Source: Mizuhopecten yessoensis
Taxonomy: Eukaryota
Assembly (NCBI RefSeq): GCF_002113885.1
Contig: NW_018408909.1
Span: forward strand, 130,922 to 194,921
Reading direction: 5' to 3'
Length of the DNA stretch: 64,000 nucleotides
Shown: positions 650 through 56,900 of the stretch, one piece after another
Layout: every line of letters begins with the position of its first letter
Position numbering within the stretch: position 1 is the first letter of the stretch
The notes under the pieces: model-generated
What the model saw: the letters and a program-made list of their open reading frames with translations, nothing else
What the model was told of the DNA's origin: nothing
Databases searched by the model: none
Translations under genes and position numbers: made by a program

Positions 650-2010
650 AATATTAGGTAATCATCAAGCACATTGGATTATCCTTAAATAATGAATAAT
701 CATCAAACAACAATGGATTATCATCAAACAACAATGGGTTATCATTAGACACACTGGGTAATCATCAAACACATTGGGTTATCATCAAACACATTGGGTT
801 ATCCTTAATAATGAATAATCATCAACACATTGGGTTATTCTTAATAATGAATAATCATCAAACACATTGGGTTATCCTTAATAATGAATTATCATCAAAC
901 AACAATGGGTTATCATCAAACAGCAATGGGTTATAATCAAAGTATCGATTAACATCAAACAACAATGGATTATCAGCAAACAACAATGGGTTATAATCAA
1001 ACAATCGATTATCATCAAACAACAATGGATTTTTATCAAACAACAATGGGTTATCATCAAACACACTGGGTAATCATCAAACACATTGGGTTATCCTTAA
1101 TAATAAATAATCATCAAACAACAATGGGTTATCATCAAACAGCAATGGGTTATAATCAAACAATCGATTATCATCAAACAGCAATGGATTATCAGCAAAC
1201 AACAATGGATTATCATCAAACAACAATGGGTTATCGTCAAACAACAATTGGTTATAATCAAACAATCGATTATCATCAAACAACAATGGATTATCATCAA
1301 ACAACAATGGATTATCATAAAACAACAATGGGTTATCATCAAACACACTGGGTAATCATCAAACACATTGGGTTATCCTTAATAATAAATTATCATCAAA
1401 CAACAATGGGTTATCATCAAACACACTGGGTAATCATCAAACACATTGGGTTATCCTTAATAATAAATTATCATCAAACAACAATGGGTTATCATCAAAC
1501 AGCAGTGGGTTATAATCAAACAATCGATTATCATCAAACAACAATGGATTATCGTCAAACAACAATGGATTATCATAAAACAACAATGGGTTATAATCAA
1601 ACAATCGATTATCATCAAACAACAATGGATTATCAGCAAACAACAATGGATTATCAGCATACAACAATGGTTTATCATCAAACAATGGGTTATCATCAAA
1701 CAACAATGGTCTATCATCAATCAACAATGGCCGATCATCAAACAATGAGTTATCATCAAACAATGAGTTATCATCAAACAACATGAAAATATCAGGAAAC
1801 AACAAGGGGTTATCTTCAAACAACAATGAGTTATCATCAAACAACCATGGGTTATCATCAAACATCAATGGATTATCAAACAACAATGAGCTATCATCAA
1901 ACAACAATGGGTTATCATCAAACAAAAAGGGTTAACATCAAACAACAATGGGTTATTATCCGACCATAATGGGTAATTATAAAATATCGATGGGTTATCA
2001 TCAAACAATG
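650..2010. repeat. Minisatellite, ~21-bp unit (TTATCATCAAACAACAATGGR) with 18-bp and longer variants
   Basis: Directly visible tandem units with diffuse edges; explains the repetitive ORFs on both strands at 858-1925. Confidence 0.95.
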
Positions 2011-23900: not shown

Positions 23901-26900
23901 TTTATTAGCAATGGAAGGCAAGATCACCAGTGAGCACATTGACTGTGTTTGGGCTTCTAGTCAGGTAGGTTATCTAGACTTATGTGTTATGATGTATGCT
24001 TGTTACGATACTCACCATTACAATCAGCTCCTCAGGAGAGATGTTTTCAGGCAGGATGTGAAGGGTAGAAACACCTGTGCTGAGAGCTCAGCCTTGTAGA
24101 TCAATGACAGTGACGCAGTTTTTACAGTGTCAGAAATTATAAGTTAGAGCCACTGTAAATATGAAAACAAATCAAAATGTTTGTATTTGTGAATATCATA
24201 TTTCTACAATTGAATAAAAATAAAACTTGAGTGAATGTAAGAATAGCATTTTATATAATCTTGTGTGCTTTGATCTCTGAAATGCAAGATCCATTATTAT
24301 AAGCTGATTATCAGTTGAAGCACTAGTAAACAACTGTTTGTTGTGATGATGTTGCATTGATTTGATTTGGTTGTTTCATTTGAAGCATTTGGTTTTATTG
24401 TTTCAGTTGAAGCATTGTAGTAAACAAGTGTATGACATCCTGATCCCACTGATCAAGAATCTTGATGTCCATCCGGTGCAGCATCTACTCAGACTTGTGT
24501 CCGCACTGGAACCCACCTCACACACAGAATCTGTAAGACCACTTTCCTTTACTGATTAGGATAGTTTCCTGGGTCTAGTGACTGAAGATAGTATTTTGGC
24601 AACTTTGTTAAGTTAATATTTGAGCAACTTGGTTAGGTTATAGAGTGTAAAAATCCACTAGTCAAAAGCCGAACTCCGGTAAATTTTATAACAGTTTGTG
24701 GAAATTTACAGTGTTTACTATGAAAATATAGCCCAGACAAGTAGATCTATTCTAAATCTGCCTGTGGGATTAATCATATAATTTGTTTACAGACGTTGTA
24801 CCTTGCCTCTGCCCTGATCAAGTGTATTTGGAACACGTGTGTAGCGTCCCAGACCTCTGTGTCACAGCACCACGCCCACGCACAGGCCCAGTACACTGCT
24901 CTACAGCAGGATGAGGACATGCACGAAGGTAGGAAGCACTTAACTTGTAATGTTTTAGAAACCTCTTCAATTTTATACCTTAACTTGATGTCAAAAATAT
25001 TGGATAACCTCTTTATTTGTAGGTAAGGATCAGCAGTTGTTTTGTTGTATGTTGAAATTGTATACCAAATACATAATGCAAAATTGCACATGCAATTAGA
25101 TTGATTTAAATAGTAAAGCACGCAAGGAAAGGTAGAGTTTGTCTATTTTGTTACCAATAACAAACTTTTATTAAATTTGGAAATTGGGGTATTTATTTTG
25201 AGGGACATAATGCTTTAATAAATAGAATTGACCGTTACAGTTTATGTGTTGTCAGGTGAAGGGAAAGCTGGCAAGCACGAGATGAGTAGTAGTGAGAGTA
25301 TCCAGATGTCTGAGGATGGAGAGAGTGAAAAGTGCTGTAACAAGGTAAGACATACATGTAAATAATACACAGACGAGTATGTCTACCAGCTAACTCCTGA
25401 TGTTGATACAATACTGAACATTGATTTAGTTGATTTTGATCAGAAAAAGAGATGAAATAACTATAACTGATGTATATATTTTTCTGCATTCTGTACAATT
25501 TCAGCCTAAATTACAATCCCAGAAAAGAGGAAGTCCCGCTAAAAAGACGCCAAGGAGTAAAGACCAAATCCAGAAGGTCAAAGACAGTCAGCATGAAAAA
25601 CACATGGACGATGTGGACTCTGAGGGTCTACATGGTCACAGTGGTGACAGCGAACTTGATCACAGTGGTGAGTCAGATGACCACAGGCATGTTCATCGTC
25701 ATCCAATTCGCCATCCCCGGCGTGATAGTGAGGCGAGTGACAGTGAGATTGATGGCAGCGAGTCTAGTGAGGATGAGGAACTAGAGGAAGGAGAGGTGGC
25801 TGATAGCAGGCACCGCCAACAATTGCTCCAGGCCCACCGCCGGGCCGTAGCCAAGTACCACTGCAACCACCACCACGCACACCACCATGACACGTCAGAG
25901 GAAGAAGAGGAAGAGGAGGAGGAAGATGACTCAGAATACCTAGAGGACTCTGAAGATGAGGAACTTCTAAAGGAAGCCAAACTGGTTCACATGAAGCATA
26001 CTTGTCAGGACAGTGAGGGAAGTTCCGATTTTGAGGATGAGGCTCGGATGGTCCATGAGGGGAAAATGTCATACCAAATGGCCCAGAGGATTCTCAGGAA
26101 ACACCACCAACAGCAGCAGAGAATACTACACCAGGCACACCAGCTGGCCCTCCAGAGTCAACAGAAGGTCAGGAGGCGAGGTGAACGACCCAAGGATCAA
26201 GGGCAGAGGAAGGTGAAGTCAGGTGAAGATCAACCAGAGGCCAGTGAGGAAGATAAGGGGGAGGACAAAGATGCTAGTCAGGAGCTTGTCAAACAGGAGG
26301 ACCTTGCTAACACCTCCCTGGTAAGTGGTCATTTATAGTTGCATAAAAGAAACTGGGAAATGCCTCAATTAATGCAACTGATATTTAATTTTAAATAACT
26401 TTAAGGATTTAGGAAGTCTGTGAATATTTGAGATTGCCATTAATGATGATTTAAATCATGCTATCATAAGTGAAGCCTACCTCAACTTTAAAAAGAAGAG
26501 AGAAAATGAAAATGATACCAGCTATTGATCTATGGTGGAAATGAAAAGTCCAATGCAAGAAATGAGATCGATTGTATCTATTTGACAGGAGTCCATTGAG
26601 TCCGATGTGGCCATGCACGGTGGGAGTCAGGACAGTGGACTGGAGCAGGCTGAGGGAGGCCACTCCCCTGGAGGTCTCACCCCAGGACAAGAGACTGAGA
26701 TATTTGACTGTTCCTCATTCATACAGCAAGTGGGAGTACAGCGCCAGAGGCAGAGACACATACAGGGGTAACTGTTGTGCTATCACTTTATCTCTCAAAA
26801 TAGATATGTTGACTTGGAGATTAAGAAGGATAGGGAATAGAAAGGTTTAGTTTCTTGAGAAAAGTTAGTTTTGCTGAGGCAAAGATAAGCTCCAATTTCC

Positions 26901-29900
26901 TGATCTGAGAAAAATCACGAAAATTATCCTAATGTGTTTGGAACAACCAGTATTCGGGTGAACAATTTCAAATTCTGGACCTTTGCCTGAAGAGTAATCT
27001 CTCCATCTTTGTGGTTTGTTGATGTGTGCTGATCTGACATCAATGAAACTATTAACTGACAAACACAAATATGTTCTGGCTTATATAAAGCTGTGAACTG
27101 GGACATATTGTACTATGTACCAGCTCATACTGAATCCTGTAGGTTTCTAGCGGGATGAATATATTTAATAACTGCTTCAGTAGAGACTAAGATGATGAAA
27201 ACAATTTCCAAAGAACCAATTTCTTGTCAATGTCCTGTGATGATACCATCCTTGCGCACACAGTATTACTGTCTGGTGGTCTGACCTCCAGTCCGTAATG
27301 TGACGATTATTAGGGACACTCGGCCATAGTCAAGTGGACTAGGGTTGGGTCACTGAGGACACAGTATAATCATTTCACATTTTGATAAATTTGATAGTTA
27401 TTTTACAAGTGATTGAGATTGAAGTTTATTCACTGGTCATATAACTTCTTTTTTTTAAACCCAACTAGATTTGGTATTATTAGGGCTTCATTTGCAAATA
27501 TGAATATATAGAAGACAAATTTTAGTAATATATGTGTGTTAGAGTCTAAAATAATATCAATGAGAAGAGGAGAACAAATACTGTTAGTGATGGGGATCAC
27601 AAAATGTGCCCCACTGCTTCCTTCAATATTAAAATCTGAAATATAAACCAGTAGATAATTAACTCTGTATAATATGTGATGTAATGCAGCACAACAATGC
27701 ACACCTGACATTTAAAGACTCGCCAATCCTTACCGGCTAACAAATTTTGTATATCAATGTGATAACCATCTTACATGTAAGAATGTTGACTTACAGCCGA
27801 GAGTACATCGAGAACATCATGAGTCCTGACGATGGTGAGGGCAGCTGTCATAGTTCACACATCAGCACCAAATCAGAGAAGAACATGGCTGACTTTGAGG
27901 GCGAGGACTTCATCAGTGACGAAGAACTGGCTCAGATCGATGCCAGCCGCTCCTTCAATCCTCACCAGATGCAGCAACACCTGTCCAGTCTGGCCTCCAT
28001 GTACCACACACACATGCCACACGGTCAGTGGCAACAACTGTCTCTGGAAATGAATTTTTAGATGATTTATTTTTACTTTATGCAGTGTGTTAAAATAAAC
28101 ACAAAAATTATAGTGAAATTTCAAACTTTGAAAGTGTTCTGTACATAAGTCAAATGATTTGTTCTCGTTGGTTTTGACAAAAATAATAAGTGGTCTCTCT
28201 TTTGGAGATTAATATTTGAGACTTAGATAATAAAGTTGGTTATAGTTTGTTGTGTGTTACAGTGATCCACCACCGCCCCCAGCAAAAAGAGATGTTCCCT
28301 TGCCACCCTTCCGACTTCCCATTTGATGATGTGTGTGGTAAAGGAAACACATTGCTGTGGGATCTGGTCCAGGAGGAAACAGCAGTGAGTTCAATTTCTA
28401 AGTAGTAAATCCATTTAATACTCATTAAATTGAGAAATGTCATTGATACAGATATCATTATACTGTGAAACCATTTTTAAAGAAGCTCATAGGTTTTTTT
28501 AAGTTTGAAAATCCAGTAGGACACATAAGCATTAAGTTTGCATCTAAAAAAAGTTAGGGCATATAGGTAGGCCTTTTGGTCTATGATGAGTTTATCATGC
28601 ATTGTTATTTACAACAGAGTTAAAAGTGCTTGATTGATTTGAATTTTCAGCATATGTTACCGGAGGGTCTAGCCATGGAGGCAGAGAAAGCACTGTGTAC
28701 CCTGGTATGCTATTCTACAGACAGGAAAATCAAGATGAAGTTTATTGAAGCCTCCATAGAAAATCTCTCCCAAAACAAATCTGTTGTGGTATCTCTTCGG
28801 CTCCTGCAAAAAATATTCAGTTCCTTTCAACCATACAGGAGTGGTGCAGATACACACCATGTCACCATGTAAGTCTAATAAAGATGTCATTGTTATCTAA
28901 CACGACTGAAATAATTGAACTTAAAGGCATTGTGGTGATTTTAATAACACTAGCAAACAGTTTTTAGCTCACCTGGCCCGAAGGGCCAAGTGAGCTTATG
29001 CGATGGTGCAGCGTCTGTCGTCCATCCGTCCGCCGTCCGGTGTCAATATTTTACTTTAAACAACTTCTTCTTAATAACCAAAAGGCCTAGGGTGATGATA
29101 TTTGGCCAGAAGCAAACCAGGATGAAGGGCTACCAAGTTTGTTCAAATAAATTACCTTCACCTATTTTCAAGGTCACAAGGGTCAAATATGTTAAAAACT
29201 TTAAACAACTTCTTCTGAATAACCAAAATGCCCAGAGTGATGATTTTTGGCTAGTAGCATGCTGGGATAAAGGGCTACCAAGTTTGTTCAAATGAATGAC
29301 CTTCGTCCATTTTCAAGGTCACAGGGGTCAATTGTCTTAAAAAATCTTTATACGACTTGTTCTGAATTACTAAGAGGCCTAGGATGATGATATTTGGCCA
29401 GTAGCATGCTGAGATGAAGGTGTACCAAGTTTGTTCAAATGAGTGACCTTGACTTATATTCAAGGTCACAGGGGTCAAATATGTTAAAAACCCTTAAACA
29501 ACTTCTTCTGCATAACTAAGAGGCCTAGGGTTAAGGTATTTGACCAGTAGCATGCTGGGATGAAGGGCTACCTAGTTTGTTCAAATGAATGATCTTGACT
29601 TATATTCAAGGTCACAGGGGTCAAATATGTTAAAAACCTTTGAACAACTTCTTCTGAATAACTAAGAGGCATAGGGTTACAATATTTGGCCAGTAGCATG
29701 CTGTGATTAAACGCTACCAAGTTTGTTCAAATGAATGACCTTCGTCCATTTTCAAGGTCACAGGGGTCAATTGTCTTAACAAATCTTTAAACAACTTCTT
29801 CTGAATAATTTAGAAGCCTAGGATAATGATATTTGGCCAGTAACATGCCAGGATGAAGGGCTATCAAGTTTGTTCAAATGAATGACCTTTACATATATTC

Positions 29901-32900
29901 AAGGTCACAGGGGTCAAATATGTTTAAAACCTTTAAACGACTTCTTCTCAATAACCAAAAGGCCTAGGATGATGCTATTTGGCCAGCAGCATGCTGGGAC
30001 AAAGGGCAACCAAGTTTATTCAAATGAATGATCTTAAATTATATTCAACGTCACTGGGGTCAAATATGTTTAAAACTTTTATACAACTTCTTCTGAATAA
30101 CCAAGAGGCCTAGGATAATGATATTTGGCCAGTAGCATGCTGGGATAAAGGGCTATCAAGTTTGTTCAAATGAATGACCTTTACATATATTCAAGGTCAC
30201 AGGGGTCAAATATGTTTAAAACCTTTAAACGACTTCTTCTAAATTAGCCAAAGGCCAAGGGTGATGATATTTGGTCATTAACAGGCTGGGATGAAGGGCT
30301 ACCAATTTTGTCAAAATGAATGACCTTTGCCCATATTCAAGGTCACAGTGGTCAATATATGTTTAAATCTTTAAATGACTTGTTCTGTATAACCAANTTT
30401 AAACGACTTCTTCTAAATTAGCCAAAGGCCAAGGGTGATGATATTTGGTCATTAACAGGCTGGGATGAAGGGCTACCAATTTTGTCAAAATGAATGACCT
30501 TCGCCCATACTCAAGGTCACAGTGGTTAATATATGTTTAAATCTTTAAATGACTTGGTCTGTATAACCAATAGGTCCAGGGTTATGATATTTTGCCAAAA
30601 GCATGCTGGGTTGGAAGACTTTAAACTCTGTTCAACCTAATGTCCTTGTTCGACATTCAAGGTCACAGGCGTCATATGTTAAAATCTTTTAATAGGTTCT
30701 TATGAATCAAACACTGATATTCTGCCTGTAGCTGTATTTTATTCCACTTTTAAGATTACAAGTGTCAGATTAATACCCGGTGAGCGATTCAGGCCCATTG
30801 GGCCTCTTGTTTCTTCAAATTTTTGTGGTCGGTAATTGAGAAAAACTTTTTTAAAAAAATCTTCTACATGAACAAATAATTTAATAAATCTGTTTAATTT
30901 GATAATAAATTAATTTGTGAAAAAAATACATGTTTTAATCTAATGACTTTAAATGCAGGTGGGCTGAAAAGGAGCTGCATATGATGAGTCACTTCTTCAT
31001 CAACCTAGTGTACTACACAGAGGCGATACAGGCAGGCAACACCGCCATCACAGCAATGTAAGTTGGCTTAGAACCTCTTAAATCTGCTGAATAGTGTCAT
31101 TCTTCTATAATTGCGGATTATCTCAATTATCACTCATGATGAGATCCAGTGAGTTAATCGGCAATCTCCAAGTCTGGTTGTCTCAGCCTGTTGATGACTT
31201 ATTGGTTATTTTATAATAAAGTTTTACTCTGATTGTCAAACAAACCTCTTGTCATGTTGATACATCACAGTAACATCGTCATGTATATCTAATATAAGCT
31301 GCATCATTAATATCATTTGACATATCGTTTTTTGTGTTTAATATTTATTAACTCCACCTATCATGTATTAAGGAAATACTATTCTTTTTTCCCTCTTTTT
31401 ACCTAGGTACTGCCACAAAGAACAGGTGCAAGTGAGACTTGATTTCTTGACGTGTGTATTTTCGGCTATGGGATCTCCAGATGGATTTAGTAAGTTTCTT
31501 GAAAAGAAGTTTATAAGGTAACCTTTGTCTTTAAAAAAGATAGTTTTAAAACAAAGATTGCTGTTTATTCTTTTATCCACTGTATAGCATGAAATTTTCG
31601 TATTTAACATAGCTGCAGTTGAATTATGCATTTGTATATCAATATGTGTACAACATAGCTGATTCAATTCAGACAGCTAAACAAGAAAGCTTGTATCATC
31701 AAATTGTTTTGTAAACATGGAAACATATATAAAACATGAAAGCATGTATTCCCAAATGTTTCTAGGGTATAAATGTGATAAATCTGTAAACACCATTTTT
31801 GTCTGTCCTGTGATGAAACCATCCTTGCGCACACAGTATTATGGTCTGGTGGTCTGACCTCCAGTCTGTAATGTGACGATTATTAGGGACGCTCGGCCAT
31901 TGTCAAGTGGACCATGGTTGGGTCACTGAGGACAATACCTGTAGAAATGAAGAGAACATAAAATGTATCTTCAAATTATCTTATATTCATCACACGATTC
32001 AAACTTCTGATGAAACACATGACATACTATACATATGTCTGATACTTTTGTGAGCAAATTAATTTGCATGTTTTACGTCCTTTATTTCCTGTAAATAAGA
32101 ATTGTATGCTTCAAATAATTTGTCACCAAGATATGAAATATGTGATCAGAATGTTCTAGTCATAAGATGGAACATGTGACAAATATTTCACTGTTCACTG
32201 TAATCTATGAGAAAGATCTTTGAGAAATTTGTACCTTTCTTTTAACTGTGATTTCCTGTCCATGTCCTGTGATGAAACCATCCTTGCGCACACAGTATTA
32301 TGGTCTGGTGGTCTGACCTTCTGACCTCCAGTCCGTAATGTGACGATTATTAGGGTCGCTCGGCCTGGGTCAAGTGGACCAGAATCGGGTCACTGAGGAC
32401 AATACCTGTAGAAATGAAAAGAACATAAAATTTATCTTCAAATTATCTTATATTCATCACACGATTCAAACTTCTGATGAAACACATGACATACTATACA
32501 TATGTCTGATACTTTTGTGAGCAAATTAATTTGCATGTTTTACATCCTTTATTTCCTGTAAATAAGAATTGTATGCTTCAAATAGTTTGTCACCAAGATA
32601 TGAAATATGTGATCAGAATGTTCTAGTCATAAGATGGAACATGTGACAAATATTTCACTGTTCACTGTAATCTATGAGAAATTTGTACCTTTCTTTTAAA
32701 TGTGATTTCTTGTCCATGTCCTGTGATGAAACCATCCTTGCGCACACAGTATTACTGTCTGGTGGTTTGACCTTCAGTCCGTAATGTGACGATTATTAGG
32801 GACGCTCTGTCATGGTCAAGTGGACTAGGACTGGGTCACTGAGGACAATTTTTGGATAATTTCATGTTGATTATCAACCAAAGAATAATTAACAGCACAA

Positions 32901-35900
32901 TGCCGTTGGAATATAAATCCCAGAAGAATGCTAAATATACCATTAAAAATTATGCTGTCTTTATTTCTGAGGGTGTGTTTGAGAATAGTGTAGGGAAAAT
33001 ATCACTATTTTATCTCTGGATGTAAAACAAAATTGTCACTAAGCAATATCAAAACATGAATTAATCTTTCAGGAAATAATAGCTGAGATTGAACTAATTT
33101 TTCATTGTGTAGGGTTGAACTTGGAGCAAGTAGACACGCTGTGGCGCTGTATAGCTTTGGACATAGAGTGCTCTGATGAGTGTCTCAAGTGGTTCCTCAA
33201 CCAGGCAAAGAGTAAAGACCACCACGCTATGGGCCTGGAAACATTTAAACACATCTTCTTGGAAAAGGTAGGAATTGTTCATGCTTAACACATCTTCTTG
33301 GAAAAGGCAGTGATTGATTTAAAGTTTATTTGACATATAAAAACTAAGAAAGGAAACAGAAGGAATTTCAAGCAATATAGCAATGTATTAATCTTTAATG
33401 GATGAACTTGTTCATGTTGTTTTCATTGGGTATTGTTAAGTATGGTATATGCAAGGTTCACTGTATTGGTAAAATAAAGAGTTATCTTTCTTTATCAGTC
33501 TTTATTGAAACAAAGCTAATGAATAGGGATATTAATAGTATATTAACGCTAGCTACATATATCCATGGTACTTAACCCTAACTGTGAGTATACAATTTCT
33601 ACAGATGCCTCAACTGAAGCCGGAATCCATGAGTATGATTGGGCTCAACCTGTTCCAACAGTTATCACACCTGACTAGGATTGCCAATGCATCCCTCGAT
33701 AAATCCCTTACAGAAGATCAGGTAAAAGTTCATTAAATACTAATAAAGATTAAAAGTTGTTCTGATTTTGAATTTCACTATTTAATGACGTAATATATTC
33801 ACATTTAGATGGATCTTTTTTTTAGTTTTTAGGTCATTAATTTTCTGGTATTAGAAATAAATCGTAATACATATTGAACCCGTTCTGCTTGAAAGTTAAA
33901 AAATACTCCAAACAGTAGGTTGACTCCAAACAGGTGATGCTATGTGTATGGAAGTTTGTTTTATCACTCAATACAACGTTTCCTCCTGTGTTTGTCGCAG
34001 GTCTGTGGTATGGACCAGCTGTGGAATATGGCCCTTAAGGCCACCAACACGGATGTCAGTATTACAGCCATACAGATCCTCAACAGTTACTACATCAACT
34101 ACGGCAACAGTCAGCTGGAGAAAGAGGAGGAGTTTGTACAGCGCTGTATGGACAGCCTTGTCCAGGCTCTGTCAGATCTCAACCAGGTAATGCCTGTTCA
34201 CTAATATTTTGAAGGCCATTGCATAAGAATTCTTGAGGATTTTCAAATTTATTCTGCTATAAGTTTAGCTGAACGCTTCTTAAAAGAAGATGGATTATTT
34301 ATTTAAAGCAAAACTTTTTAATTCAATCTAAACATGCCGAAACGACATGCTTATGTAATGCTACATATTTCAATATTTTTTGTAAATAAATTTCCTCACC
34401 CTCAAATATTTCAATTTGATATTCCTTCTTAGAATCCAGATACCAATTTACTAGTCATTCAAAGAGGTTTGGTGCTATTGAAAAACCACCTGGAAGCGTT
34501 CAGGAAACGGTATGCCTACCATTTACGTAACTGGCAGATAGATGGGAAGGGAATCCGCAGTCATCAGCGTTCCATCCACGACAAACAATCATCTATGATG
34601 AGAGTTATTCTACAGCCTGCAGGCATGACTGACAAGGTTTGTTTACAACATATTTAAGTGTTAATGTTTTTGTCTTTTCTATGCCACACATATATTTGTT
34701 AATGAGAGCACTAAATGTAATGCATAAGATTAATAATGTATAACAAAGATTTTTTATTTTTTTTATACCTCTAGATATGTTTCATTTTGATTTAATACTA
34801 AGATTTGATTAGGAATTCAGATATCTTGTGAGCATTTATTCATTAACAAAGACAGGGGATGCATCTAAATGCTCAATCATTTAAAAAATTGAAATATTTG
34901 TATATAGGTCGTTCAAAGGGCAGTCCCACGATATAAGTATTTATGTATTGAATATTTACTCTTTTGATTGAGTGATACTAAGTAAATTATTTTTAACATT
35001 AAGAATATAAACTATGTAAGTTATCAGTTATGAAAATAATTTTCCAAGAAAAATTTGTTACAGACCCAGTTAGAGATGTCATCAACAGACCTGGTGGCAG
35101 AGCTACGTGCAGAGGTGACACGGTGGTGGGAGGGGCTACACAAACAACAGCTGGCCCGACACCAGGCAGAGGGTGCCCACAGCAGCACCATGCTCTCGCC
35201 GATACTTGGTGCCATGCTGGGTGATGGCCCTATTCGTATGATCACCCTTGGACAAGATCTTACAGTAGACATGGACGAGAAATCACTTGGAGATATGCAG
35301 TTCAAAGACATGCAGGTACTTATTGTTTGGTATGAAATGTATGACTGAAGAACTAATTTTGATACACTTTTTTTTCTGGGGACTTGTTGGGGCTGATAAT
35401 GGGCCCCATGCCCAATTGAAACTATTTCATATTTGTACCACATTCCCCAAATTTGCAGATTAGTCCCACTGGTATATTTCCTTCCAAGGATGAGACAAAA
35501 AGGCCCGATTCCCAAATTAACCAAACAAAACTGATATATTCTACTTACACAATAAAATGTTTAATCTTAAATGCTTAAAATGTTAAGCTTCACTGTCCTC
35601 CGATTTCTATGAAATGGCGAGAACTTCTGTGATTTGGTAGATGATAGACTTATATGGTAATATAATGTTTCGCAGTAAATATGATACGTGGAAGCTCATC
35701 AAACATTTTATGTACACAATTCATTAATTCAGAGTTAATAGGGCTTTAAAATTATCAGTTTGTTTTGTTTTAGCGACACTCTGTATGACACAAGTTTTCT
35801 ACATTACAGCTGGTGTTTGTATCAGTGGGTGCCAGTAGACCTCAGCGTAAGATGGACGGCAGTATCCCCTCCTCCTGTCTGCCAGCACCCTCCCACAGCA

Positions 35901-41900: not shown

Positions 41901-44900
41901 GTCCGTCGTCCGTCGTCCGTCTTGCGTCGTGCGTAAACTTTTACATTTTCAACTTCTTCTCAAGAACCAGTGGATGGATTTTTTTCAAACTTGGTCAGAA
42001 TCATTCTTGGTAGATGAGGCTTCAAAATTGTAAAATTGGGATTCCTACCCCAACCCCTGGGGCCAGGGCGTGGCCCCAAAGGGAAAATTATCCAATATTT
42101 CAAAAATCTTCTTCTCCAGACTCAGAGGTACTACACTCATTTTCTCTACGTGGAAAGAAAGATCATCAGGGACTATACTTAAATTGTAAATTTCAGGACN
42201 NNNNNNNNNNNNNNNNNNNNNNNNNNNNNNNNNNNNNNNNNNNNNNNNNNNNNNNNNNNNNNNNNNNNNNNNNNNNNNNNNNCGGGGCCCCAAAGGGAAC
42301 ATTTACCAATATTTTCAAATTCTTATCCATTGATGACATGACAAGTATTGTATTTCACTTAGTTTACATGCTGATTTCCACATCACATCTAAACAATAAA
42401 ATAAAGCTACCAGTATCTATGATATAACTCAGGTGACCGCTAAGGCCCTTGGGCCTCTTGTTTAAAAAAGCAATTGAAGAAAAATATTGCAGTAGAATAC
42501 ACATATTAAAAGAACACTTTTTAATTGCATATGGTAAATATCATAGTTTCTTGGAATCTGCAATCACGTGAAATGCTTTTAATTTTAAGGTAAATTCATC
42601 CTTATAACTATTTACAATGATTTCCATTTTATTTCAGTGTTCAAAACATAACAAGTATGAAGGTACCATGTCGGAGCTGAAGAAGATGTTTGCATATCTA
42701 CAGGTATAAACAATTGACTTACATTGATTTAGTGAACACGAACTATTTCTTCTCATGATATAAACTTGTATTATCAAGCAGTAATGCTTGTTTATGAACT
42801 TTTACTTTGCCTTCCTTTAATGTCAAATATGCAATGCTGTTTGAATGCTGTTTATGAACTTTTATTTTGCCTTCCTTTAATGTCAAATATGCAATGCTCT
42901 TTGAATGCTTGTTTATGAACTTTGATCTATTTTCTCAGTTTTAATTGATTTTCAAACGAAAATTATTGAGTAAAGGAATTCAGTGGCTGGATTACTTTCA
43001 TTTGTAGTAGTTTGCTGTAAACATGTCAATATTTTACTTTCCAATAGGAGAGTGAAAGAAAAGCATACAACCCTCGGAGCTTCTGTAAGACCTACACCAT
43101 GGACAAACAGCCTCTTAACACAGGGGAACAGAAAGACATGACCGAGTTCTTCACCGACCTCATCAGTAAATTGGAGGATATGTCGCCAGAAATGGTAAAG
43201 CTGTTTGATAATGGAAAACTGGGATATATTAGTATTAGGGCTCACCAAATTTTCCAAAATTCTTTGTTGACAATAAGGATAGCAAACATTATACAATAAG
43301 CATACTTTTACATGTTAAGAGCAGAAAACTTTTTGGAAAGGTACTTTTAGGGAAGAACATAACTTATCGCCATTTATCTGTGATTTTGTTCCCAAAACTG
43401 GAAAATAAGTGTTACAGTTAAAAACTTATCACTAGGAGGACATCAAAAGAAATTGTAGATGTAATTTCATTATTTGAAAAATAAAATAGACAGTTAAATG
43501 AAATAGATATATTTTTCTGTTTTCAGCACAAGCTAGTGAAGAGCCTGTTTGGGGGTATTCTGACAAACAACGTGGTGTCTCTGGTAAGTTCACTCCTAAG
43601 TCAAGGCTAATCTATCTATATGTTATACTCCACAGAGACCAAAACGGATTTAATACAGATCTAATGATCTTGACAAAATTTGCATCATGCAACGTTTGAA
43701 TTTGTAAAGTGTTTAAATCTGTACAGATAATTTCAAAAATAATACTGGGGTTCACTGGAAAAAGAATATTTTATTAAAAAAATTGAAAAGTTTATTTTCA
43801 GGGTTAGATCTCTTATAACTATGTTATATGTTGAAGAATTAAATTAAATTTAAATCCTGATTAAAAGACGTTTTGATTCCTATCCTTAAATTACTATAGA
43901 TTAACGTAAGTTTTGTTGATGTTTAGGATTGTCCCCATGTGAGTCGGACCCTGGAAGAATTCTACACAGTCAGATGTCAGGTCACAGACATGAAAAACCT
44001 CTACGTAAGTGTGATAGAGATATGGACAACAAGAGTCTTGAAAGTATCTTTGGTATGAAAGATAATTTATCACATAACATTACATCTAGTTTCTTCAATT
44101 TTCTGATATTTTCTGTAAAACATTTTAAATTTCTGATATTTTCTGTAAAACATTTAACCAAAGAAAGTCAGAACTTTCGTTATTGTGTTTCAGTTTGTTT
44201 TGTACATGATCTTATGTGAGATTATATCTGTGTTGACAGGAATCGCTGGATGAGGTGACGGTAAAGGATATGCTAGAAGGAGACAATATGTATACCTGCT
44301 CAAAGTGCCAGAAGAAAGTGCGTGCTGAGAAACGGTAGGTAGTATTTTCATCTAATCCATTAATGTCAGGCCATATTAACAGTAACAAGATTTTCATGTG
44401 AATGAGGTATCTGTATATAAAAGAGTAACAACTTGAATTAAATTAAATTTAAACAAATTTTAAAAAGTTGATAACAAATTTTGAATTGAATTCTCCAATA
44501 TATTTTCCTATCAGGGCATGTTTCAAGAGGTTACCGAGGATCCTGTGCTTCAACACCATGCGGTATACGTTTAATATGGTAACCATGATGAAGGAGAAAG
44601 TGAACACCCACTTCTCATTCCCCTTGTGTTTGGACATGTCTCAGTACATGGAGAAAACTCTCATGGGACCAGACAAACTCAAAGGTATGTCTAATAAGAT
44701 TCTTTCAACAAAGAGTACCATAATGGTCTACTTTTGGGTAGTGTTTGATTTGAAAACATATTGAAGTTGGTCACTTTTCTAGGAAGTATGACTCGCACCT
44801 GAGTGTCATGATTTGTGCTTGTGATACTGTCATGCACCACCTGGAAACTAGAAAGTAGTGAGTTTTACTTCTATGGTGTTTAGGAAGTTGTTCTATCAAG

Positions 44901-50900: not shown

Positions 50901-53900
50901 GTGGAGTTTGGGGGAGGACCTCCAGGGCTGCCCCCCTTCACTCAGTATGTCCTACAGAGATTCTGGGAGGTAAGTACATACAGGTCATCACAGTTCATTG
51001 TAGCATTATTGTTGTGAATAAGATGGGAAATATTGCCTTTTAAGGATCCCTGTACTACTGCCAAAAACTGTAACTACACTTTAGAAGAAACAAGAATTTC
51101 CGGCATGACAATGGTTTTGATCTATCATTTCTGAAAAGAAAATCATACCTTCTGGAAAAATCAACAACTGTTCTACAGTTTTATCCAAAATGGAATTAAG
51201 GGAAGGTTACTAAGTTTACAAAAAAGCATAATGCAATGGGTCCGGGATCCTTAACAGATATATTTTCAATTCAAAAACTGAATATTTAAAAGAACCAGAA
51301 ACATTTAGACAATCCTTGATCATTGTGTTGGTATTATCCATTGCTATGTGTCAGAAATGGTTCAATAACTCATCTTCTGGTCATCCTTCCAGCTGACCAA
51401 GAGCTGTCCACAGCCATGTCTGGAGTGGATGTCTACTCAAGTGACCAGGAACAAACTAGCCAGCCATTGGCTGCTGAACCAGATGGAGAGTTGGGTAGAG
51501 CCCTATCTAATAGCCAACAACAATGTTAGAGTCAGAAATGGTGAGATTCATTGGAAATACAATTTAATTTATATGAACAGCTTGTCAGAAATGGGGAGTG
51601 TAGTTGGAATATGAAATTGAAGCCTAATGCCTTGGTAGAGTGACCAGTGGCTGTTTTTCTGCAGGTGGTAAAGAAATTGTGATAAATGTTGTTTGTTTAT
51701 GGAAATGTAAGTTTTGTACATTTCTTTGCTAGAGTAATTATATACGAATTTTGAACATCTGTTAATAATTTGACAATGTACTGTCCTACTACTTTATAAC
51801 ACAACAGCATTATAATCAATATCACTGGTACCTGATAATTAAGAAATTATATAGAACTTAAAGTGTGTTAAATTAATATTTCTTGTTTGTCATATTTCAT
51901 GGATGATGCTTGTTGTTCCTTGTCTAAAGGGTAATTTTACAACAACAGAATAAAAAAATAACTTCAGTATCCAAACTGTTGAAAGTAAAATGTCTTTAGC
52001 ATCAACAGAAATTCTCTATACTCAAGTGATTTTGTCAATAAAAGCCTAAGTCATGGCAGTTAAAATCACATTAGAAGGAAACAGTTATTAGTTTGATGTG
52101 TTTGTTTTCCCTTGCAGCCACCGCATGTCTTCTTGTATCCCTTGTGCCAAGCAACCACTTCCGCCAAACATTTGTAGCCACACGTCGCATCCTTAGTCCC
52201 CAGAAAGAAATCTCAGTAAGTTTGGCTCATCTGTTTTTAGGCAACACACGACTTTGAAATGTTGGTGTTGTTTGTTTTAGATTATTTTAAATGAATGCTT
52301 CCAACCATTTACAGTAATAACAGACAAGAATTCAGATTCACATAGGTAATTTATGCTTTAATTAGTTTGAAAAATGTCTATGTCATTCATCGTTCCTTTC
52401 TTTCTGTTTTTTAGATATCAACAGAAGGTATCGTTGTATTACATCAGGTAAGATTGATTTCTTTTTAATGCTAATGAGAGAAGTTATTTATGATGCAGAA
52501 ATTTTTAAATAGCCATTGAAATTTCTGATAATGTTCATTGTATTGCAGATTGAGCAGATAAAGGTCAATTTTGTTTCATAACTACCAAGTTGTGTTGATT
52601 TACTATTCTTTCCTTTAACAATCAAAAGTAAAGAAATTTTTCATTTCTTTTCATTTCAAAGTTAAATATTTCATAGTTGATGACTTAAAGTTTCCATAGT
52701 TTCTTCGGGATGAAATTACAAAATGGTTATTTCCATCCTCACCTTATATGTTGTTGATTTGTTGTAGATCTTTAACCATTTGTTAAATCTCCTACAACGT
52801 GCCAAAGTGTATGCGGACTCCCAGAGTCACGGCACAACTAAACTGCTGAGCTATTTCACTGTACTGACCTACTGTCTCATCACTAGGGAGGAAAAACTCA
52901 TGGTAAATAGTTGGCAACATCCTTGGAAATTCTGTTTACTTTCTAGACATGTATTGAAATATGACTGATATTTTGTCAGGTTGAATGTAAGAATTTTTCG
53001 ACCTAGAATATTTCAAACTGTTAATGACTAATATAGATTACCAAATAAAAAATATGTAAACAGGAAGAAATGTTGAAAAGGATTACGAAAATTAAAATGT
53101 CCACCACTGCTAACAACATAGTGGACCTACCATTTATGTCAACAGCACATGGTAGTCCAATCGTTTTGGGCTTGCAACAGGCAAATAGCAAGTCATTTAA
53201 GAAATATGTTCATGTGAATAGCCATTTTAAAAGTATGCTGTTATATATATATAATGATGATAAAATACCTGTTATTGTAGTTCTCCAGTTACTTCGGTGA
53301 CCTATGGCAGCTGTTCCAACCCCGGCTCTGTGAGCCTCAGATCTCCATGCACCACAACAAGCAGGTGAGTACTGTCATCAGGCCACAGAATCACCAAGTT
53401 TCTAAACTTTGAGAATGATCTCAATTCTCAAAATTATATGGATTTTAAGGGCAATATTTCCTCAAACATCAGTTGAAATAGTAAAATATTTATGATATTA
53501 AGAAATCATCTCTTGCCTTGAAACAGGTAATGATTGTGGAAATTCTAATTATTTAATAGGGAGGAAATGTGAAATTTCAGAATATTTAGATTACTAAGTT
53601 AAAATGGTTGAAACCAGGGTCATTTTTTTTACATGAAATGAGTATGCACTGATTGATGTGTTAAGTGATTTGTATAAAAAGAGTCATGTTGTATTGAAAT
53701 CTTGGGTGTCTACATCAATGCTCTCCTGAACATAATGAATTTGTAAACAAGTGGTAAACAATAAAAAATAGTTTTGTGCACTTAACACAATCTTGTTTGT
53801 ACAAGTGTATAAACTTCTTCTCCTGCAGGCATTGCTGTACTTCTGGTATCAGGTGTGTCAGGACTGCCCTGAGAACATCAAACTCATCGTCACCAATCCC

Positions 53901-56900
53901 CACGTCTGTAAACAGATAGCGTACAACTACATTCTGTAAGTAGTGGTTCATCCCCACGTCTGTAAACAGATCGCATACAACTACATTCTGTAAGTAGTGG
54001 TTCATCCCCACGTCTGTAAACGGATAGCGTACAACTAAATCCTGTAAGTCGTGGTTCATCCCCAAGTCTGTAAACAGATAGCATACCACTACATCCTGTA
54101 AGTAGTGGTTCATCCCCAAGTCTATAAACAGATAGCGTACAACTACATCCTGTAATTAGTGGTTCAACCCCACGTCTGTAAACAGATAGCGTACAACTAC
54201 ATTCTGTAAGTAGTGGTTCATTCCCACGTCTGTAAACAGATAGCATACAACTACTTCCTGTAAGTAGTGGTTCATCCCCAGGTCTGTAAACAGATAGCAT
54301 ACAACTACATCCTGTAAATAGTGGTTCATCCCCACGTCTGTAAACAGATCGCATACAACTACATTCTGTAAGTAGTGGTTCATCACCACTTCTGTAAACA
54401 GATAGCGTACAACTACATCCTGAAAGTAGTGGTTCATCCCCACGTCTGTAAACAGAATGCATAAAACTACATCTTGTAAGTAGTGGTTCATCCCCAAGTC
54501 TGTAAACAGATAGCATACAACTACATCCTGTAAGTAGTGGTTCATACCCACGTCTGTAAACAGATAGCATACAACTACATCCTGTAAGTAGTGGTTCATA
54601 CCCACGTCTGTAAACAGATAGCATACAACTACTTCCTGTAAGTAGTGGTTCACCCCCAGGTCTGTAAACAGATAGCATACAACTACATCCTGTAAGTAGT
54701 GGTTCATACCCACGTCTGTAAACAGATAGCATACAACTACATCCTGTAAATAGTGGTTCATCCCCACGTCTGTAAACAGATAGCGTACAACTACATTCTG
54801 TAAGTAGTGGTTCATTCCCACGTCTGTAAACAGATAGCATACAACTACATCCTGTAAATAGTGGTTCATCCCCACGTCTGTAAACAGATAGCGTACAACT
54901 ACATTCTGTAAGTAGTGGTTCATTCCCACGTCTGTAAACAGATAGCATACAACTACTTCCTGTAAGTAGTGGTTCATCCCCACGTCTGTAAACAGATAGC
55001 ATACAACTACATCCTGTAAATAGTGGTTCATCCCCACGTCTGTAAACAGATCGCATACAACTACATTCTGTAAGTAGTGGTTCATCACCACTTCTGTAAA
55101 CAGATAGCGTACAACTACATCCTGTAATTAGTGGTTCAACCCCACGTCTGTAAACAGATAGCGTACAACTACATCTTGTAAGTAGTGGTTCATCCCCAAG
55201 TCTGTAAACAGATAGCATACAACTACATCCTGTAAGTAGTGGTTCATGTGGGCTAGATGTCAAGTGTTGTATTTGATTCGTGTAATTTAAAGTTAAAAAT
55301 ATTTATGAAATGACATTCTTTATTTTAAATTTTTAGGCAACTATATCTTGATATATATTTTTTTTCCATTCTGTTGTAAATGATATGACAGAATGTACAA
55401 ACAGATGAAGGCTTCGTCTGATATTTATTAGGAAAGTTTACATGTGGACTAAAATGAATGCTGTATATCGGGGAAATTTTTGCCACAGTTTAACCTTCCC
55501 CATTTTTGCCTTCTGCAATCGGGGCATATCTATCATTACAGCGACCATTAGTTAACAGCTGTGAAGGGCAAAATTAACACTATGCAAATATGGATTTTAC
55601 AGGCTTAGGGGAAAAGTTTTACTGGGTTAAGTTTTCCAGTATACAGTCTGTTTTGGTATGGAAGGAATTGTTGATGATTGTGTGTTCTTTGACCAACAGA
55701 GCGGACCATGAAGACCAGGAGGTCGTCATGTTCAACAGGATCATGCTACCGTCGTACTACGGTCTGCTGCGGATGTGTTGTCAGCAGTCTCGCTCCTTCA
55801 CTCGAACTCTAGCCCAACACCAGAACATCCAGTGGGCCTTCAAGAACATATCACCCTACCCAGCTCAGTACACTCAGGTCAGTTATCAGGCATGGGAGAG
55901 GTGGTGTCTCTGGCTTAAAAGACAATTGTCTTTAATTACAGAATATATATCATTGATTTCAATACTGAGAATCATATCAAGAGAAACTTGTTCTTACCGG
56001 TTAGAATTTTCTCAGCACAGTTAAGAAATGTGAACTTGCAATATGAAAGCTCACTGCCATTTCATTGGTAAATATCATATTGCTATGACCACACACTCAA
56101 TCTTATTTGTTAGCAGACAGTGAAATCACAAACAAACAAAAAAACTTAACCTCTTACTTAGTTTTTGTTTAACTTAGAATGTTTAATTTTGTTACAGGCT
56201 GTTGAAGAGTTGTTCAAGATCATGAAGATGATGGCCACAAAGTACCAAGACAGTACTGAGGAAGAAATCCGCTCAGTCAATCTCTTCAAGCGCAACATGA
56301 TGCAGATGTTCCTCAACTTTCTGGATGCACGCTCCATGTGGCAGACACTCATTAGGTGGGTGATAGGCTATAACGATGACAAGTTCAGTACACTTTCAAA
56401 TTACACTACCACCCTTTGTCAAGACAGAATTTTGGCACGATAAAGAAGTATAAAGAAAGAAACATGTAAATGAAATTTTAAGAAATAGGTAAAAAAAATG
56501 GACCTTGAATTATGTTGGTGTAAAGTGAAGTGAGGGATATAACATAACAATATAGAGAGTACAGGGGTACTTTACTATCCCAAAGCATCAGCTACCAAGC
56601 TACATGTTTACACGAAGGAACACTTTTTCCTCTCTCAACACTGAGTTAATGTTAATGAGTAGTTCAGTGAAGAATTAATCTCAATGATGAAGTCAAAGAG
56701 GATTTATATTTCTTTATTGATTTTGGTTTATAGTGCATTGAAGGTTCTGATAGACACCACAGATGACAGACTGTTGCTGATATATCAACAGGGCCTCCAG
56801 ATGATCACAGAGGTAAGCAAGTTCTCCTGCTTGTTAGAGGATGTACTAGGATTCCAATTGAAATATTTAATGCATTACATAATTAAATTCAAACAGCTAA

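What the first reader, a model, noticed from the sequence alone, without database searches (positions are those of the whole stretch)
27231..32847. Four-copy family of intronic box C/D RNAs antisense to the U6 snRNA internal stem-loop, hosted in USP34
Seen: four ~131-nt paralogues (27231-27361, 31804-31934, 32263-32401, 32717-32847), all sense to the host gene. Each reads TGTCC-T-GTGATGA(C) ... CTGA(D)-GGACA, an exact kink-turn geometry. The internal order is C box, CATCCTTGCGCA, CACAG, hairpin, GTGACGA (C'), TTATTAGGG, hairpin, D box. The boxes and the 12-mer are invariant across copies while the hairpins vary, including a compensatory change (GCC/GGT in copy 1, GTC/GAC in copy 4). Established knowledge (recalled): metazoan U6 nt 64-75 is UGCGCAAGGAUG, the exact reverse complement of the 12-mer, and U6 is 2'-O-methylated at several sites including A70. 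Inference: these are U6 methylation guides. The D' box is degenerate (CACA, two possible registers), so the D+5 rule predicts A70 or C68. I do not recognise this as a named snoRNA or recall USP34 hosting a C/D RNA.
Basis: partly seen in the sequence, partly recalled or inferred. Interest (0 to 1): 0.9.

Follow-up and report, generated by a model that had tools for sequence, protein, structure and literature searches.

The report
Ancient U6-targeting box C/D snoRNA family
Four intronic copies of a small nucleolar guide RNA in the USP34 gene of a probable mollusc carry a perfect 12-base match to the catalytic stem-loop of U6 spliceosomal RNA. They are distant relatives of vertebrate SNORD23, which was only recently proposed as the guide for U6 A70 methylation.

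Summary
Four + strand elements (131, 131, 139 and 131 nt) have a 5-bp terminal stem, C box GUGAUGA, D box CUGA, an internal UGACGA box and an invariant 12-mer. That 12-mer is the exact complement of nt 64-75 of this genome's best-scoring U6 gene (-22.9 kcal/mol; 0 of 2000 shuffles reach it).

They are not a dispersed repeat: the genome holds only these four copies plus one allelic fragment. All four lie in sense orientation in two introns of a confirmed USP34/puf gene. Copies 2-4 form a 467-bp tandem array within one intron.

The family is not unnamed. All copies give sub-threshold Rfam matches to SNORD23 (21.5-26 bits; gathering score 64). A metagenomic homologue, L081, matches SNORD23 over its full length (40.8 bits). 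Mouse Snord23 was proposed in 2025 as the U6-Am70 guide.

Four homologues with the same anatomy but different, complementary terminal stems occur on eukaryote-like metagenome contigs. One of these contigs looks sponge-like. Their host genes differ, and related USP34 loci lack the element.

The methylated nucleotide is unresolved: A70 or C68, depending on the D' register.

Verdict: a real, probably functional U6 guide, and a new invertebrate member of a known kind. Interest is moderate.

The parts
27231..27361 (+). Copy 1, a box C/D snoRNA of 131 nt. Terminal stem 27231-27235 with 27357-27361; C box 27237-27243; U6 antisense 27247-27258; D' region 27257-27263; C' box 27300-27306; TTATTAGGG motif 27307-27315; D box 27353-27356. 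It lies in USP34 intron 26321-27796, 435 nt upstream of the 3' splice site.
   Evidence: (168 bits with R1)
31804..31934 (+). Copy 2, 131 nt. C box 31810-31816; U6 antisense 31820-31831; C' box 31873-31879; D box 31926-31929. It is the first unit of the tandem array in intron 31490-33072.
32263..32401 (+). Copy 3, 139 nt, with an 8-nt duplication in the loop of hairpin 1. C box 32269-32275; U6 antisense 32279-32290; C' box 32340-32346; D box 32393-32396.
32717..32847 (+). Copy 4, 131 nt. C box 32723-32729; U6 antisense 32733-32744; C' box 32786-32792; D box 32839-32842. Its 3' end is 225 nt upstream of the 3' splice site at 33072.
31804..32849 (+). Tandem array of period about 467 bp and 2.3 units (snoRNA plus AT-rich spacer). 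It generated copies 2-4 within one intron.
   Evidence: spacers are 98.1% identical, snoRNA bodies 91-93%
26321..27796 (+). USP34 intron that hosts copy 1 (GTAAGT donor at 26321, CAG acceptor ending at 27796).
31490..33072 (+). USP34 intron that hosts copies 2-4. It lies between exon 31407-31489 and the exon starting at 33073.
44468..44761 (+). Host-gene exon encoding part of the UCH (ubiquitin hydrolase) catalytic domain.
   Evidence: PF00443, E = 2.5e-8
55590..56021 (+). Host-gene exon used to identify the host. It matches 3091-3897-aa proteins, the named ones called USP34 or puf.

Best explanation
These are four paralogous genes for an intron-encoded box C/D snoRNA. They are released from USP34 pre-mRNA introns and assembled on the terminal C/D kink-turn.

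The single functional antisense element lies between the C box and a degenerate D' box. It pairs with nt 64-75 of U6 snRNA, which form the loop and 3' strand of the internal stem-loop, and directs fibrillarin-type 2'-O-methylation there.

The family is the invertebrate counterpart and a distant homologue of vertebrate SNORD23. By that homology, and because A70 is the only 2'-O-methylated residue known in vertebrates inside the paired stretch, the most likely target is A70. That requires D' = CACA overlapping the last two paired bases. The alternative register (D' = C-N-N-A directly after the 12-mer) predicts C68.

Shown here: the anatomy, the exact complement to the species' own U6, the copy number, the intronic sense position, and the homologues in other lineages. 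Inferred: expression, RNP assembly, methylation and the exact target nucleotide.
For: **Box C/D anatomy**
- All four copies have canonical spacing, and a generic scan of the window finds only them.

**Pairing with U6**
- The 12-mer matches own U6 nt 64-75 exactly. Duplex energy is -22.9 kcal/mol against -9.6 +/- 2.2 for shuffled guides, and 0 of 2000 shuffles reach it.
- The genome's U6atac fits poorly: there is an A:C mismatch and the best duplex is an interrupted one at -12.4 kcal/mol.

**Copy number**
- The genome holds only four copies plus one 99% identical allelic fragment.
- Other genomic occurrences of the 12-mer are U6 genes or an unrelated repeat without a C box.

**Link to SNORD23**
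- All four copies hit RF00603 on the stem, the C box and ACCAUCCUUGC, and they are the best RF00603 hits in the genome.
- The metagenomic homologue L081 matches RF00603 end to end at 40.8 bits, E = 4e-6, including the 3' hairpin.

**Homologues elsewhere**
- L081, L073, L096 and L151 score 59, 53, 38 and 28 bits with model R1.
- The other 116 contigs that carry the same forced 17-nt pattern score at most 20.7 bits.
- The homologues share C-N-N-A-G after the 12-mer, a UGNNGA C' box, two hairpins and a D box.
- Five different terminal stems are all fully complementary.

**Selection among the paralogues**
- The spacers of the tandem units are 98.1% identical, while the snoRNA bodies are 91-93% identical.
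- All changes fall in the hairpins. The guide and boxes, including their CpGs, are invariant.

**Literature**
- Am70 had no assigned guide in a 2021 review (PMC7960923).
- Snord23:U6 chimeras together with high RiboMeth-seq signal at A70 were reported in mouse (PMC11863803).
Against: - No expression or methylation data exist for this organism.
- The Rfam SNORD23 scores are far below the gathering score (64 bits), and part of the similarity is dictated by the shared C box and target.
- The D' box is degenerate. The register best conserved across lineages (C13, A16) predicts C68, which is not a known 2'-O-methyl site in vertebrates.
- The mouse Snord23-U6 interaction itself fell below that study's significance cut-off and has no loss-of-function support.
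- The metagenomic homologues were retrieved with a pattern that forces the C box and guide, and were first picked by a stem filter. Conservation of those parts is therefore partly by construction.
- Three orthologous USP34 loci lack the element.
Confidence: 0.72

Rival explanations
1. This is a U6 guide of independent origin. It would be a lineage-specific box C/D RNA that converged on the same U6 segment as SNORD23 and is not homologous to it. The function would be the same; only the classification would differ.
For: The window copies reach only 21.5-26 bits against RF00603, and the aligned part is the stem, the C box and the antisense, all of which are functionally constrained. The host genes differ everywhere. 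snoRNA guides are known to evolve and move quickly (general knowledge).
Against: L081 is 59 bits from the window family with R1. It aligns to SNORD23 over all 110 model positions, with about 15-19 bits more than the forced 5' part gives, including the 3' hairpin and its loop. The ACC before AUCCUUGC, which U6 pairing does not require, is shared with the vertebrate consensus.
Confidence: 0.2
2. The RNA binds the U6 internal stem-loop without methylating it. It would act as a chaperone that opens the stem-loop, for example to allow other modifications such as m2G72 or U4/U6 annealing. Alternatively it methylates a residue other than A70 (C68, A69 or G67).
For: The D' box is degenerate and its register ambiguous. 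The conserved C-N-N-A directly after the 12-mer points to C68. The chimeric eCLIP paper notes low methylation at many novel D'-guided sites and raises methylation-independent roles. In 4 of 5 lineages a conserved AGGGA motif after C' can pair with the guide's own UCCUU, which suggests regulated access.
Against: A C' box of the form UGNNGA is conserved. So is a closing hairpin between D' and C', as in active C'/D' modules. A70 is methylated in vertebrates and lies at the fifth position for the CACA register.
Confidence: 0.2
3. The elements are non-functional repeats: a MITE/SINE, retroposed snoRNA pseudogenes, or a U6-derived antisense fragment amplified by tandem duplication.
For: Copies 2-4 arose by a recent tandem duplication with spacers 98% identical. 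The snoRNA bodies differ more than the spacers.
Against: There are only five loci in a 988-Mb genome, all in one gene or its allele. There are no terminal inverted repeats beyond the 5-bp stem. The identity with antisense U6 ends exactly at the 12-mer. All substitutions avoid the boxes and the guide and largely preserve hairpin pairing. Homologues occur in unrelated lineages.
Confidence: 0.04
4. The true target is another RNA (rRNA, U6atac or an mRNA), and the U6 match is incidental.
For: rRNA of this genome was not scanned directly.
Against: A 12-nt perfect match sits exactly in the guide slot and is conserved in five lineages, extending to 13 nt in three of them. U6atac of this genome has an internal mismatch. 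The genome-wide occurrences of the target 12-mer are U6 genes or one repeat family. The stretch upstream of the D box is not conserved and is part of a hairpin.
Confidence: 0.03

Closest known systems
SNORD23 / HBII-115 (Rfam RF00603), a vertebrate box C/D snoRNA. It was long an orphan and was proposed in 2025 as the guide for U6 Am70.
   Same: Shared features: a terminal stem UGYCC/GGRCA, the C box, the spacer ACC, the antisense CAUCCUUGC to the U6 internal stem-loop placed directly after the C box, a degenerate D' box, a 3' hairpin before the D box (seen through the bridging homologue L081), a single functional guide, and a length of 110-140 nt.
   Different: - The window copies score 21.5-26 bits, against a gathering score of 64.
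- The invertebrate antisense is 12-13 nt (U6 64-75/76); the vertebrate consensus has 9 nt.
- The middle part (hairpin 1, the C' box, the AGGGA motif) does not align.
- The host gene differs, and there are four copies, three of them in one intron.
Vertebrate U6-specific methylation guides: mgU6-47, mgU6-53 and mgU6-77 (SNORD7, 8, 9, 10), SNORD67 and SNORD94.
   Same: They are intron-encoded box C/D snoRNAs whose antisense element pairs with U6 and selects a 2'-O-methylation site by the box D/D' plus 5 rule. They are nucleolar guides rather than Cajal-body guides (established knowledge; table in PMC7960923).
   Different: They address other U6 residues (A47, A53, C60, C62, C77). No sequence relationship was detected: SNORD10 scored only 10.7 bits.
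Clustered intronic snoRNAs of Drosophila and plants.
   Same: Several snoRNA copies lie in one intron, generated by tandem duplication (general knowledge).
   Different: Here all copies carry the same guide. How three units are processed from one intron in this organism is unknown.

Membership tests
Box C/D snoRNA | C box RUGAUGA near the 5' end and D box CUGA near the 3' end | tested here: met
   GUGAUGA and CUGA are invariant in all four copies and in four homologues.
Box C/D snoRNA | A terminal stem of 4-6 bp that brings C and D together with kink-turn spacing | tested here: met
   UGUCC/GGACA lies one base before R-UGAUGA and directly after CUGA. Across five lineages 100% of cells pair, and 4 of 6 pairs show changes on both sides. 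Caveat: the homologues were pre-filtered for a 4-nt stem.
Box C/D snoRNA | Internal C' and D' boxes | tested here: inconclusive
   C' is UGACGA, and UGNNGA is conserved in all lineages. D' is degenerate (CACA; C-N-N-A across lineages) with two possible registers.
Box C/D snoRNA | An antisense element of at least 10 nt ending at or next to a D or D' box | tested here: met
   The complement to own U6 nt 64-75 is 12 nt and perfect, at -22.9 kcal/mol; 0 of 2000 shuffles reach it.
Box C/D snoRNA | Expression as a discrete RNA bound by fibrillarin, NOP56, NOP58 and SNU13 | not testable with these tools
   No expression or binding data are available.
SNORD23 (RF00603) | Score at or above the Rfam gathering threshold of 64 bits | tested here: not met
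   The window copies score 21.5-26 bits. The best homologue, L081, scores 40.8 bits.
SNORD23 (RF00603) | A 5' module of stem, C box and ACCAUCCUUGC antisense to the U6 internal stem-loop | tested here: met
   The cmscan alignments match the consensus over model positions 1-26 in all four copies, except for one compensated stem pair and the variable spacer base after the C box.
SNORD23 (RF00603) | Similarity in the 3' half of the RNA (the hairpin before the D box) | tested here: inconclusive
   It is not aligned for the window copies. It is aligned for L081, whose hairpin loop GUCAUGUGGAC is 10 of 11 identical to the window's GUCAAGUGGAC.
U6 2'-O-methylation guide | The fifth nucleotide upstream of D/D' pairs with a residue that is methylated in U6 | tested here: inconclusive
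   The register CACA at guide positions 11-14 gives A70, which is methylated in vertebrates. The register at positions 13-16 gives C68. The methylation map of this species' U6 is unknown.
MITE / dispersed repeat | Many dispersed copies in random orientation with terminal inverted repeats and target-site duplications | tested here: not met
   BLAST and the covariance model find five loci genome-wide. All are in one gene or its allele, and all are in sense orientation.

The most novel reading that the evidence does not exclude
The U6 stem-loop guide is a pan-metazoan, possibly older, snoRNA whose ancestral form has a 12-13-nt antisense plus a second conserved element, AGGGA(A/C), just after the C' box. 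That element would pair either with the guide's own UCCUU, acting as a self-masking pseudo-target, or with U6 next to the target. The RNA would then be a regulated or bipartite clamp on the catalytic stem-loop rather than a plain methylation guide. In invertebrates it might also methylate C68, a site unknown in vertebrates.
Probability: 0.12. Interest if true: 0.65.

Novelty: new member of a known kind. Interest (0 to 1): 0.42.

Why it matters
U6 Am70 lies in the catalytic internal stem-loop. Together with Cm62 and Cm63 it was part of the 2'-O-methylated substrates that promoted m2G72 installation, although that paper singles out Cm62 and Cm63 as required (PMC13109388). A 2021 review still listed no guide for Am70. 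The 2025 assignment to Snord23 rests on sub-threshold chimeric reads without a knockout.

A family with the same module but a longer, perfect antisense to U6 is kept in a probable mollusc, a probable sponge and other eukaryote-like contigs. This is independent comparative support that the SNORD23 lineage exists to address this U6 segment, and that it is ancient. It also supplies sequences for a broader covariance model; the current Rfam model misses invertebrate members. The result refines a recent finding rather than revealing a new mechanism.

Tried and rejected
**Rfam hits**
- The search at gathering thresholds found nothing in the window.
- The weak Afu_198 hit at 30967-31103 is a USP34 exon, colinear with orthologous loci and with AG/GT borders.
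- The weak snoR16 hit at 27595-27686 has no boxes or stem.
- The RF00603 hit L014 elsewhere in the genome has no C box.

**Alternative targets and origins**
- U6atac is rejected because of an internal A:C mismatch.
- A MITE or repeat origin is rejected on copy number.
- An antisense U6 pseudogene is rejected because the identity stops at the 12-mer.

**Orthologous USP34 loci**
- L159-L161 come from other assemblies and are 72-80% identical in several exons. They have no CATCCTTGC and no R1 hit within 10 kb either side.
- L165 is too short to tell.
- P0148 could not be located.

**Other negative or uninformative results**
- Covariation within the four paralogues alone is not significant.
- Single-sequence folding z-scores are unremarkable, -0.8 to -2.1, as is usual for C/D RNAs.
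- Literature searches for the guide sequence returned only U6 qPCR primers or probes.
- The scan's earlier notes held nothing for this place or topic.

**Steps not taken**
- The taxa of L073, L081 and L096 were not determined, because the exon-sized queries would be unlikely to reach named full-length proteins.
Exons were searched one by one by reference and the joined step was left out.


Full report
**1. What is in the sequence**

The alignment (A1/A2) shows these invariant parts:
- a 5-bp terminal stem, UGUCC/GGACA
- one unpaired U followed by GUGAUGA (the C box)
- a 3-nt spacer
- the 12-mer CATCCTTGCGCA
- CACAG
- GUGACGA (the C' box)
- UUAUUAGGG
- GGGUCA followed by CUGA (the D box)

The two hairpins between these blocks hold every variable column except one spacer base. 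Copy 3 is 139 nt because 8 nt are duplicated in the loop of hairpin 1.

With the snoRNA-like structure, 95.7% of pair cells are standard pairs, against 24-48% when the partners are slid by 1-3 columns. Four close paralogues give no statistical power, however (125 of 500 shuffles reach it).

A generic scan of both strands of the 64-kb window finds only these four elements. The scan asked for R-UGAUGA, then CUGA 50-190 nt downstream, plus a flanking stem of at least 4 bp.

**2. The target**

Rfam U6 (RF00026) finds seven loci in the genome. The best (L001, 118 bits) is a canonical 107-nt U6. The others carry substitutions and look like variants or pseudogenes.

In L001 the sequence TGCGCAAGGATG occupies nt 64-75, so the 12-mer is its exact complement. 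The predicted duplex is -22.9 kcal/mol. Shuffled guides give -9.6 +/- 2.2, and 0 of 2000 reach the observed value.

The genome's two U6atac genes read UAAGGACGG at the equivalent place. This puts an A:C mismatch in the middle of the pairing, and the best duplex is an interrupted one at -12.4 kcal/mol.

The stretch upstream of the D box belongs to hairpin 2. It is not conserved among copies or lineages, so there is only one guide.

**3. Not a repeat**

A DNA search of the 988-Mb assembly with copy 1 and a covariance-model search with R1 return the same set. That set is the four copies plus a 99% identical fragment at the end of a 1.8-kb contig (C79092). Its upstream flank matches that of copy 1, so it is an allelic haplotig.

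The 12-mer occurs 21 times genome-wide. Apart from the snoRNA copies, these are U6 loci, a dispersed repeat family and a few unrelated single sites, none with a C box.

**4. Host gene and position**

The + strand carries a long multi-exon gene.
- One exon contains part of a UCH domain (PF00443, E = 2.5e-8).
- Exon 55590-56021 matches proteins of 3091-3897 aa. The named ones are called USP34 (ants, a crinoid) or puf (Drosophila); the Nucella lapillus protein is unnamed. A Lottia gigantea DUF3517 fragment is the best named match at 79%.

The host is therefore USP34. The organism is probably a mollusc, although this was not established.

Splice borders read from the sequence and from colinearity with related loci place the copies as follows:
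- Copy 1 lies in intron 26321-27796.
- Copies 2-4 lie together in intron 31490-33072.

Copies 2-4 form a tandem array with a period of about 467 bp. Three units in one intron departs from the vertebrate habit of one snoRNA per intron (general knowledge).

**5. Selection among the paralogues**

The spacers of the tandem units are 98.1% identical (6 mismatches in 315 nt). The snoRNA bodies of the same units are only 91-93% identical (9-12 mismatches in 131 nt).

The excess lies entirely in the hairpins and partly at CpG sites. The CpGs inside the guide and the C' box are untouched in all copies and in the allele.

The flanks of copy 1 are unalignable with those of the array beyond about 15 nt, yet the body is 91-94% identical. 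This pattern fits constraint on the boxes, the guide and the UUAUUAGGG block, with pair-preserving drift in the hairpins. Why the hairpins outpace the spacers is not fully explained.

**6. Relation to known families**

No Rfam family reaches its gathering score. In E-value mode all four copies hit SNORD23 (RF00603) at 21.5-26 bits. The alignment covers the stem, the C box and ACCAUCCUUGC. These are also the best RF00603 hits in the whole genome.

The literature on SNORD23 and U6:
- SNORD23 (HBII-115) was an orphan.
- SNORD23:U6 chimeric reads were reported in 2017, with a predicted site (U64) that is not methylated (PMC5389715).
- A 2021 review lists no guide for U6 Am70 (PMC7960923).
- A 2025 chimeric eCLIP study places the Snord23 D' guide at U6-Am70, where RiboMeth-seq signal is high. 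The interaction fell below their cut-off and was not tested by loss of function (PMC11863803).
- Am70, Cm62 and Cm63 were the 2'-O-methylations in the stem-loop substrates that promoted m2G72 installation in vitro; that paper singles out Cm62 and Cm63 as required (PMC13109388).

**7. Homologues elsewhere**

One scan of metagenome contigs for TGATGA-NNN-CATCCTTGCGC gave 120 contigs before it was truncated. Most are GC-rich bacterial coincidences.

Four contigs are AT-rich or carry eukaryote-like exons and have the whole architecture: L073, L081, L096 and L151. That architecture is:
- a terminal stem that differs in each and is complementary in each (UUCCC/GGGAA, CAGGCC/GGCCUG, UUCUC/GAGAA, CACUCC/GGAGUG)
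- the 12-mer, extended to 13 nt in three of them
- C-N-N-A-G directly after the 12-mer (CACAG, CAGAG, CUCAG, CAUAG)
- a hairpin
- a UGNNGA box
- in three of the four, an A-rich stretch with AGGGA(A/C)
- in three of the four (not L151), a second hairpin
- CUGA

Model R1, built only from the window copies, scores these four at 59.4, 53.2, 37.6 and 28.3 bits. The other 116 contigs share the forced pattern yet stay at or below 20.7 bits. That is an internal control for ascertainment.

L081 also matches SNORD23 over all 110 positions (40.8 bits, E = 4e-6), including the 3' hairpin. Its hairpin loop is 10 of 11 identical to the window's. It therefore bridges the window family and vertebrate SNORD23.

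The neighbourhoods of the homologues differ:
- L151 lies beside a kelch-like gene whose closest named relatives are sponge proteins, from Halichondria (50%) and an EukProt entry Em0004g47a that I take to be Ephydatia (51%). The element sits just upstream of an ARF-like exon.
- L073 carries SMC6-like exons.
- L096 carries a DEAD-box exon.

The family is therefore old and mobile between hosts.

Three USP34 loci from two other assemblies (L159-L161) are colinear with the window exon by exon. They have no such element in the corresponding introns or within 10 kb.

**8. How it probably works, and what is open**

Established box C/D biology suggests the following sequence (inferred, not shown):
1. 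The RNA is trimmed out of the spliced or debranched intron.
2. It is protected by the proteins bound at the C/D kink-turn.
3. It pairs with the U6 loop and 3' strand of the internal stem-loop.
4. It positions the methyltransferase on the nucleotide opposite the fifth guide base upstream of D'.

Two registers for D' are possible.
- CACA at guide positions 11-14 gives A70. This agrees with the mouse data and with the only vertebrate 2'-O-methyl site in the duplex. It is CACU in L096 and CCCC in the vertebrate consensus.
- C-N-N-A at positions 13-16 gives C68. C13 and A16 are invariant in all five invertebrate-type lineages, and they would face the conserved G and A of UGNNGA.

I put roughly 50% on A70, 25% on C68 and 25% on another residue or no methylation.

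The conserved AGGGA block can form 5-6 pairs with the guide's own UCCUU(G). It also loosely resembles U6's own AAGGA. Whether this masks the guide, helps pairing or binds a protein is unknown.

**9. Verdict**

The claim of an unrecognised family is not supported: this is an invertebrate, multi-copy member of the SNORD23 lineage.

Its value lies in three things. It gives comparative support for a very recent and still tentative assignment. It shows that the ancestral antisense is longer than the vertebrate one. And it shows that current models miss the invertebrate members.

The human U6 numbering and modification list were taken from the cited papers and from memory of the standard sequence. 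The numbering was verified on this genome's own U6.

Noticed in passing
window 5893-7956 (+): An intact 687-aa ORF with a BED zinc finger and a hAT C-terminal dimerisation domain. It looks like a hAT-family transposase upstream of, or in the first part of, the USP34 locus.
   Followed up: partly
window 29054-30571: A tandem repeat array with a 146-bp unit, also seen as 439-bp and 174-bp periods, 83-97% matches. It fills much of the USP34 intron between exons at about 28.87 kb and 30.96 kb.
   Followed up: no
window about 42.2 kb: A run of N (read as X in ORFs 42014-42427 and 42045-42302). It is an assembly gap or a masked stretch and was left untouched.
   Followed up: no
window 31136-31240 (+): AUGAUGA, an internal UGAUGA and a CUGA at box C/D-like spacing, in the intron between exons 30957-31060 and 31407-31489. 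There is no terminal stem, no Rfam hit and no obvious antisense. It may be a degenerate or external-stem-dependent snoRNA, or chance.
   Followed up: partly
window 965-1925 and 53715-55263: Long ORFs on both strands made of short periodic peptide repeats (HQTTMGY-type and CSCMLSVYRRGDEPLLT-type). These are minisatellite-like arrays, not obvious genes.
   Followed up: no
L020, L021, L022, L025, L026, L028, L030, L036 (own genome): A dispersed repeat family that happens to contain the same 12-mer CATCCTTGCGCA in a conserved context (...GGTCTGGAG-12mer-AAAGGGACTCAATTT...). It has no C box and is unrelated to the snoRNA.
   Followed up: partly
L002-L007 (own genome): Only one canonical U6 gene (L001) was scored. 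Six further RF00026 hits carry substitutions, some inside the stem-loop target (TGCAACAGGATG, TTCGCAAGGATG), and look like variants or pseudogenes.
   Followed up: partly
L160 10196-11119: In one related assembly the segment homologous to window exon 30957-31060 is repeated four times at a 286-bp period, directly after the preceding exon.
   Followed up: no
window 31934-32716 versus 31804-32401: The tandem-unit spacers are 98.1% identical, but the embedded snoRNA bodies are only 91-93% identical. The hairpins diverge faster than the presumably neutral spacer. CpG decay explains only part of this.
   Followed up: partly
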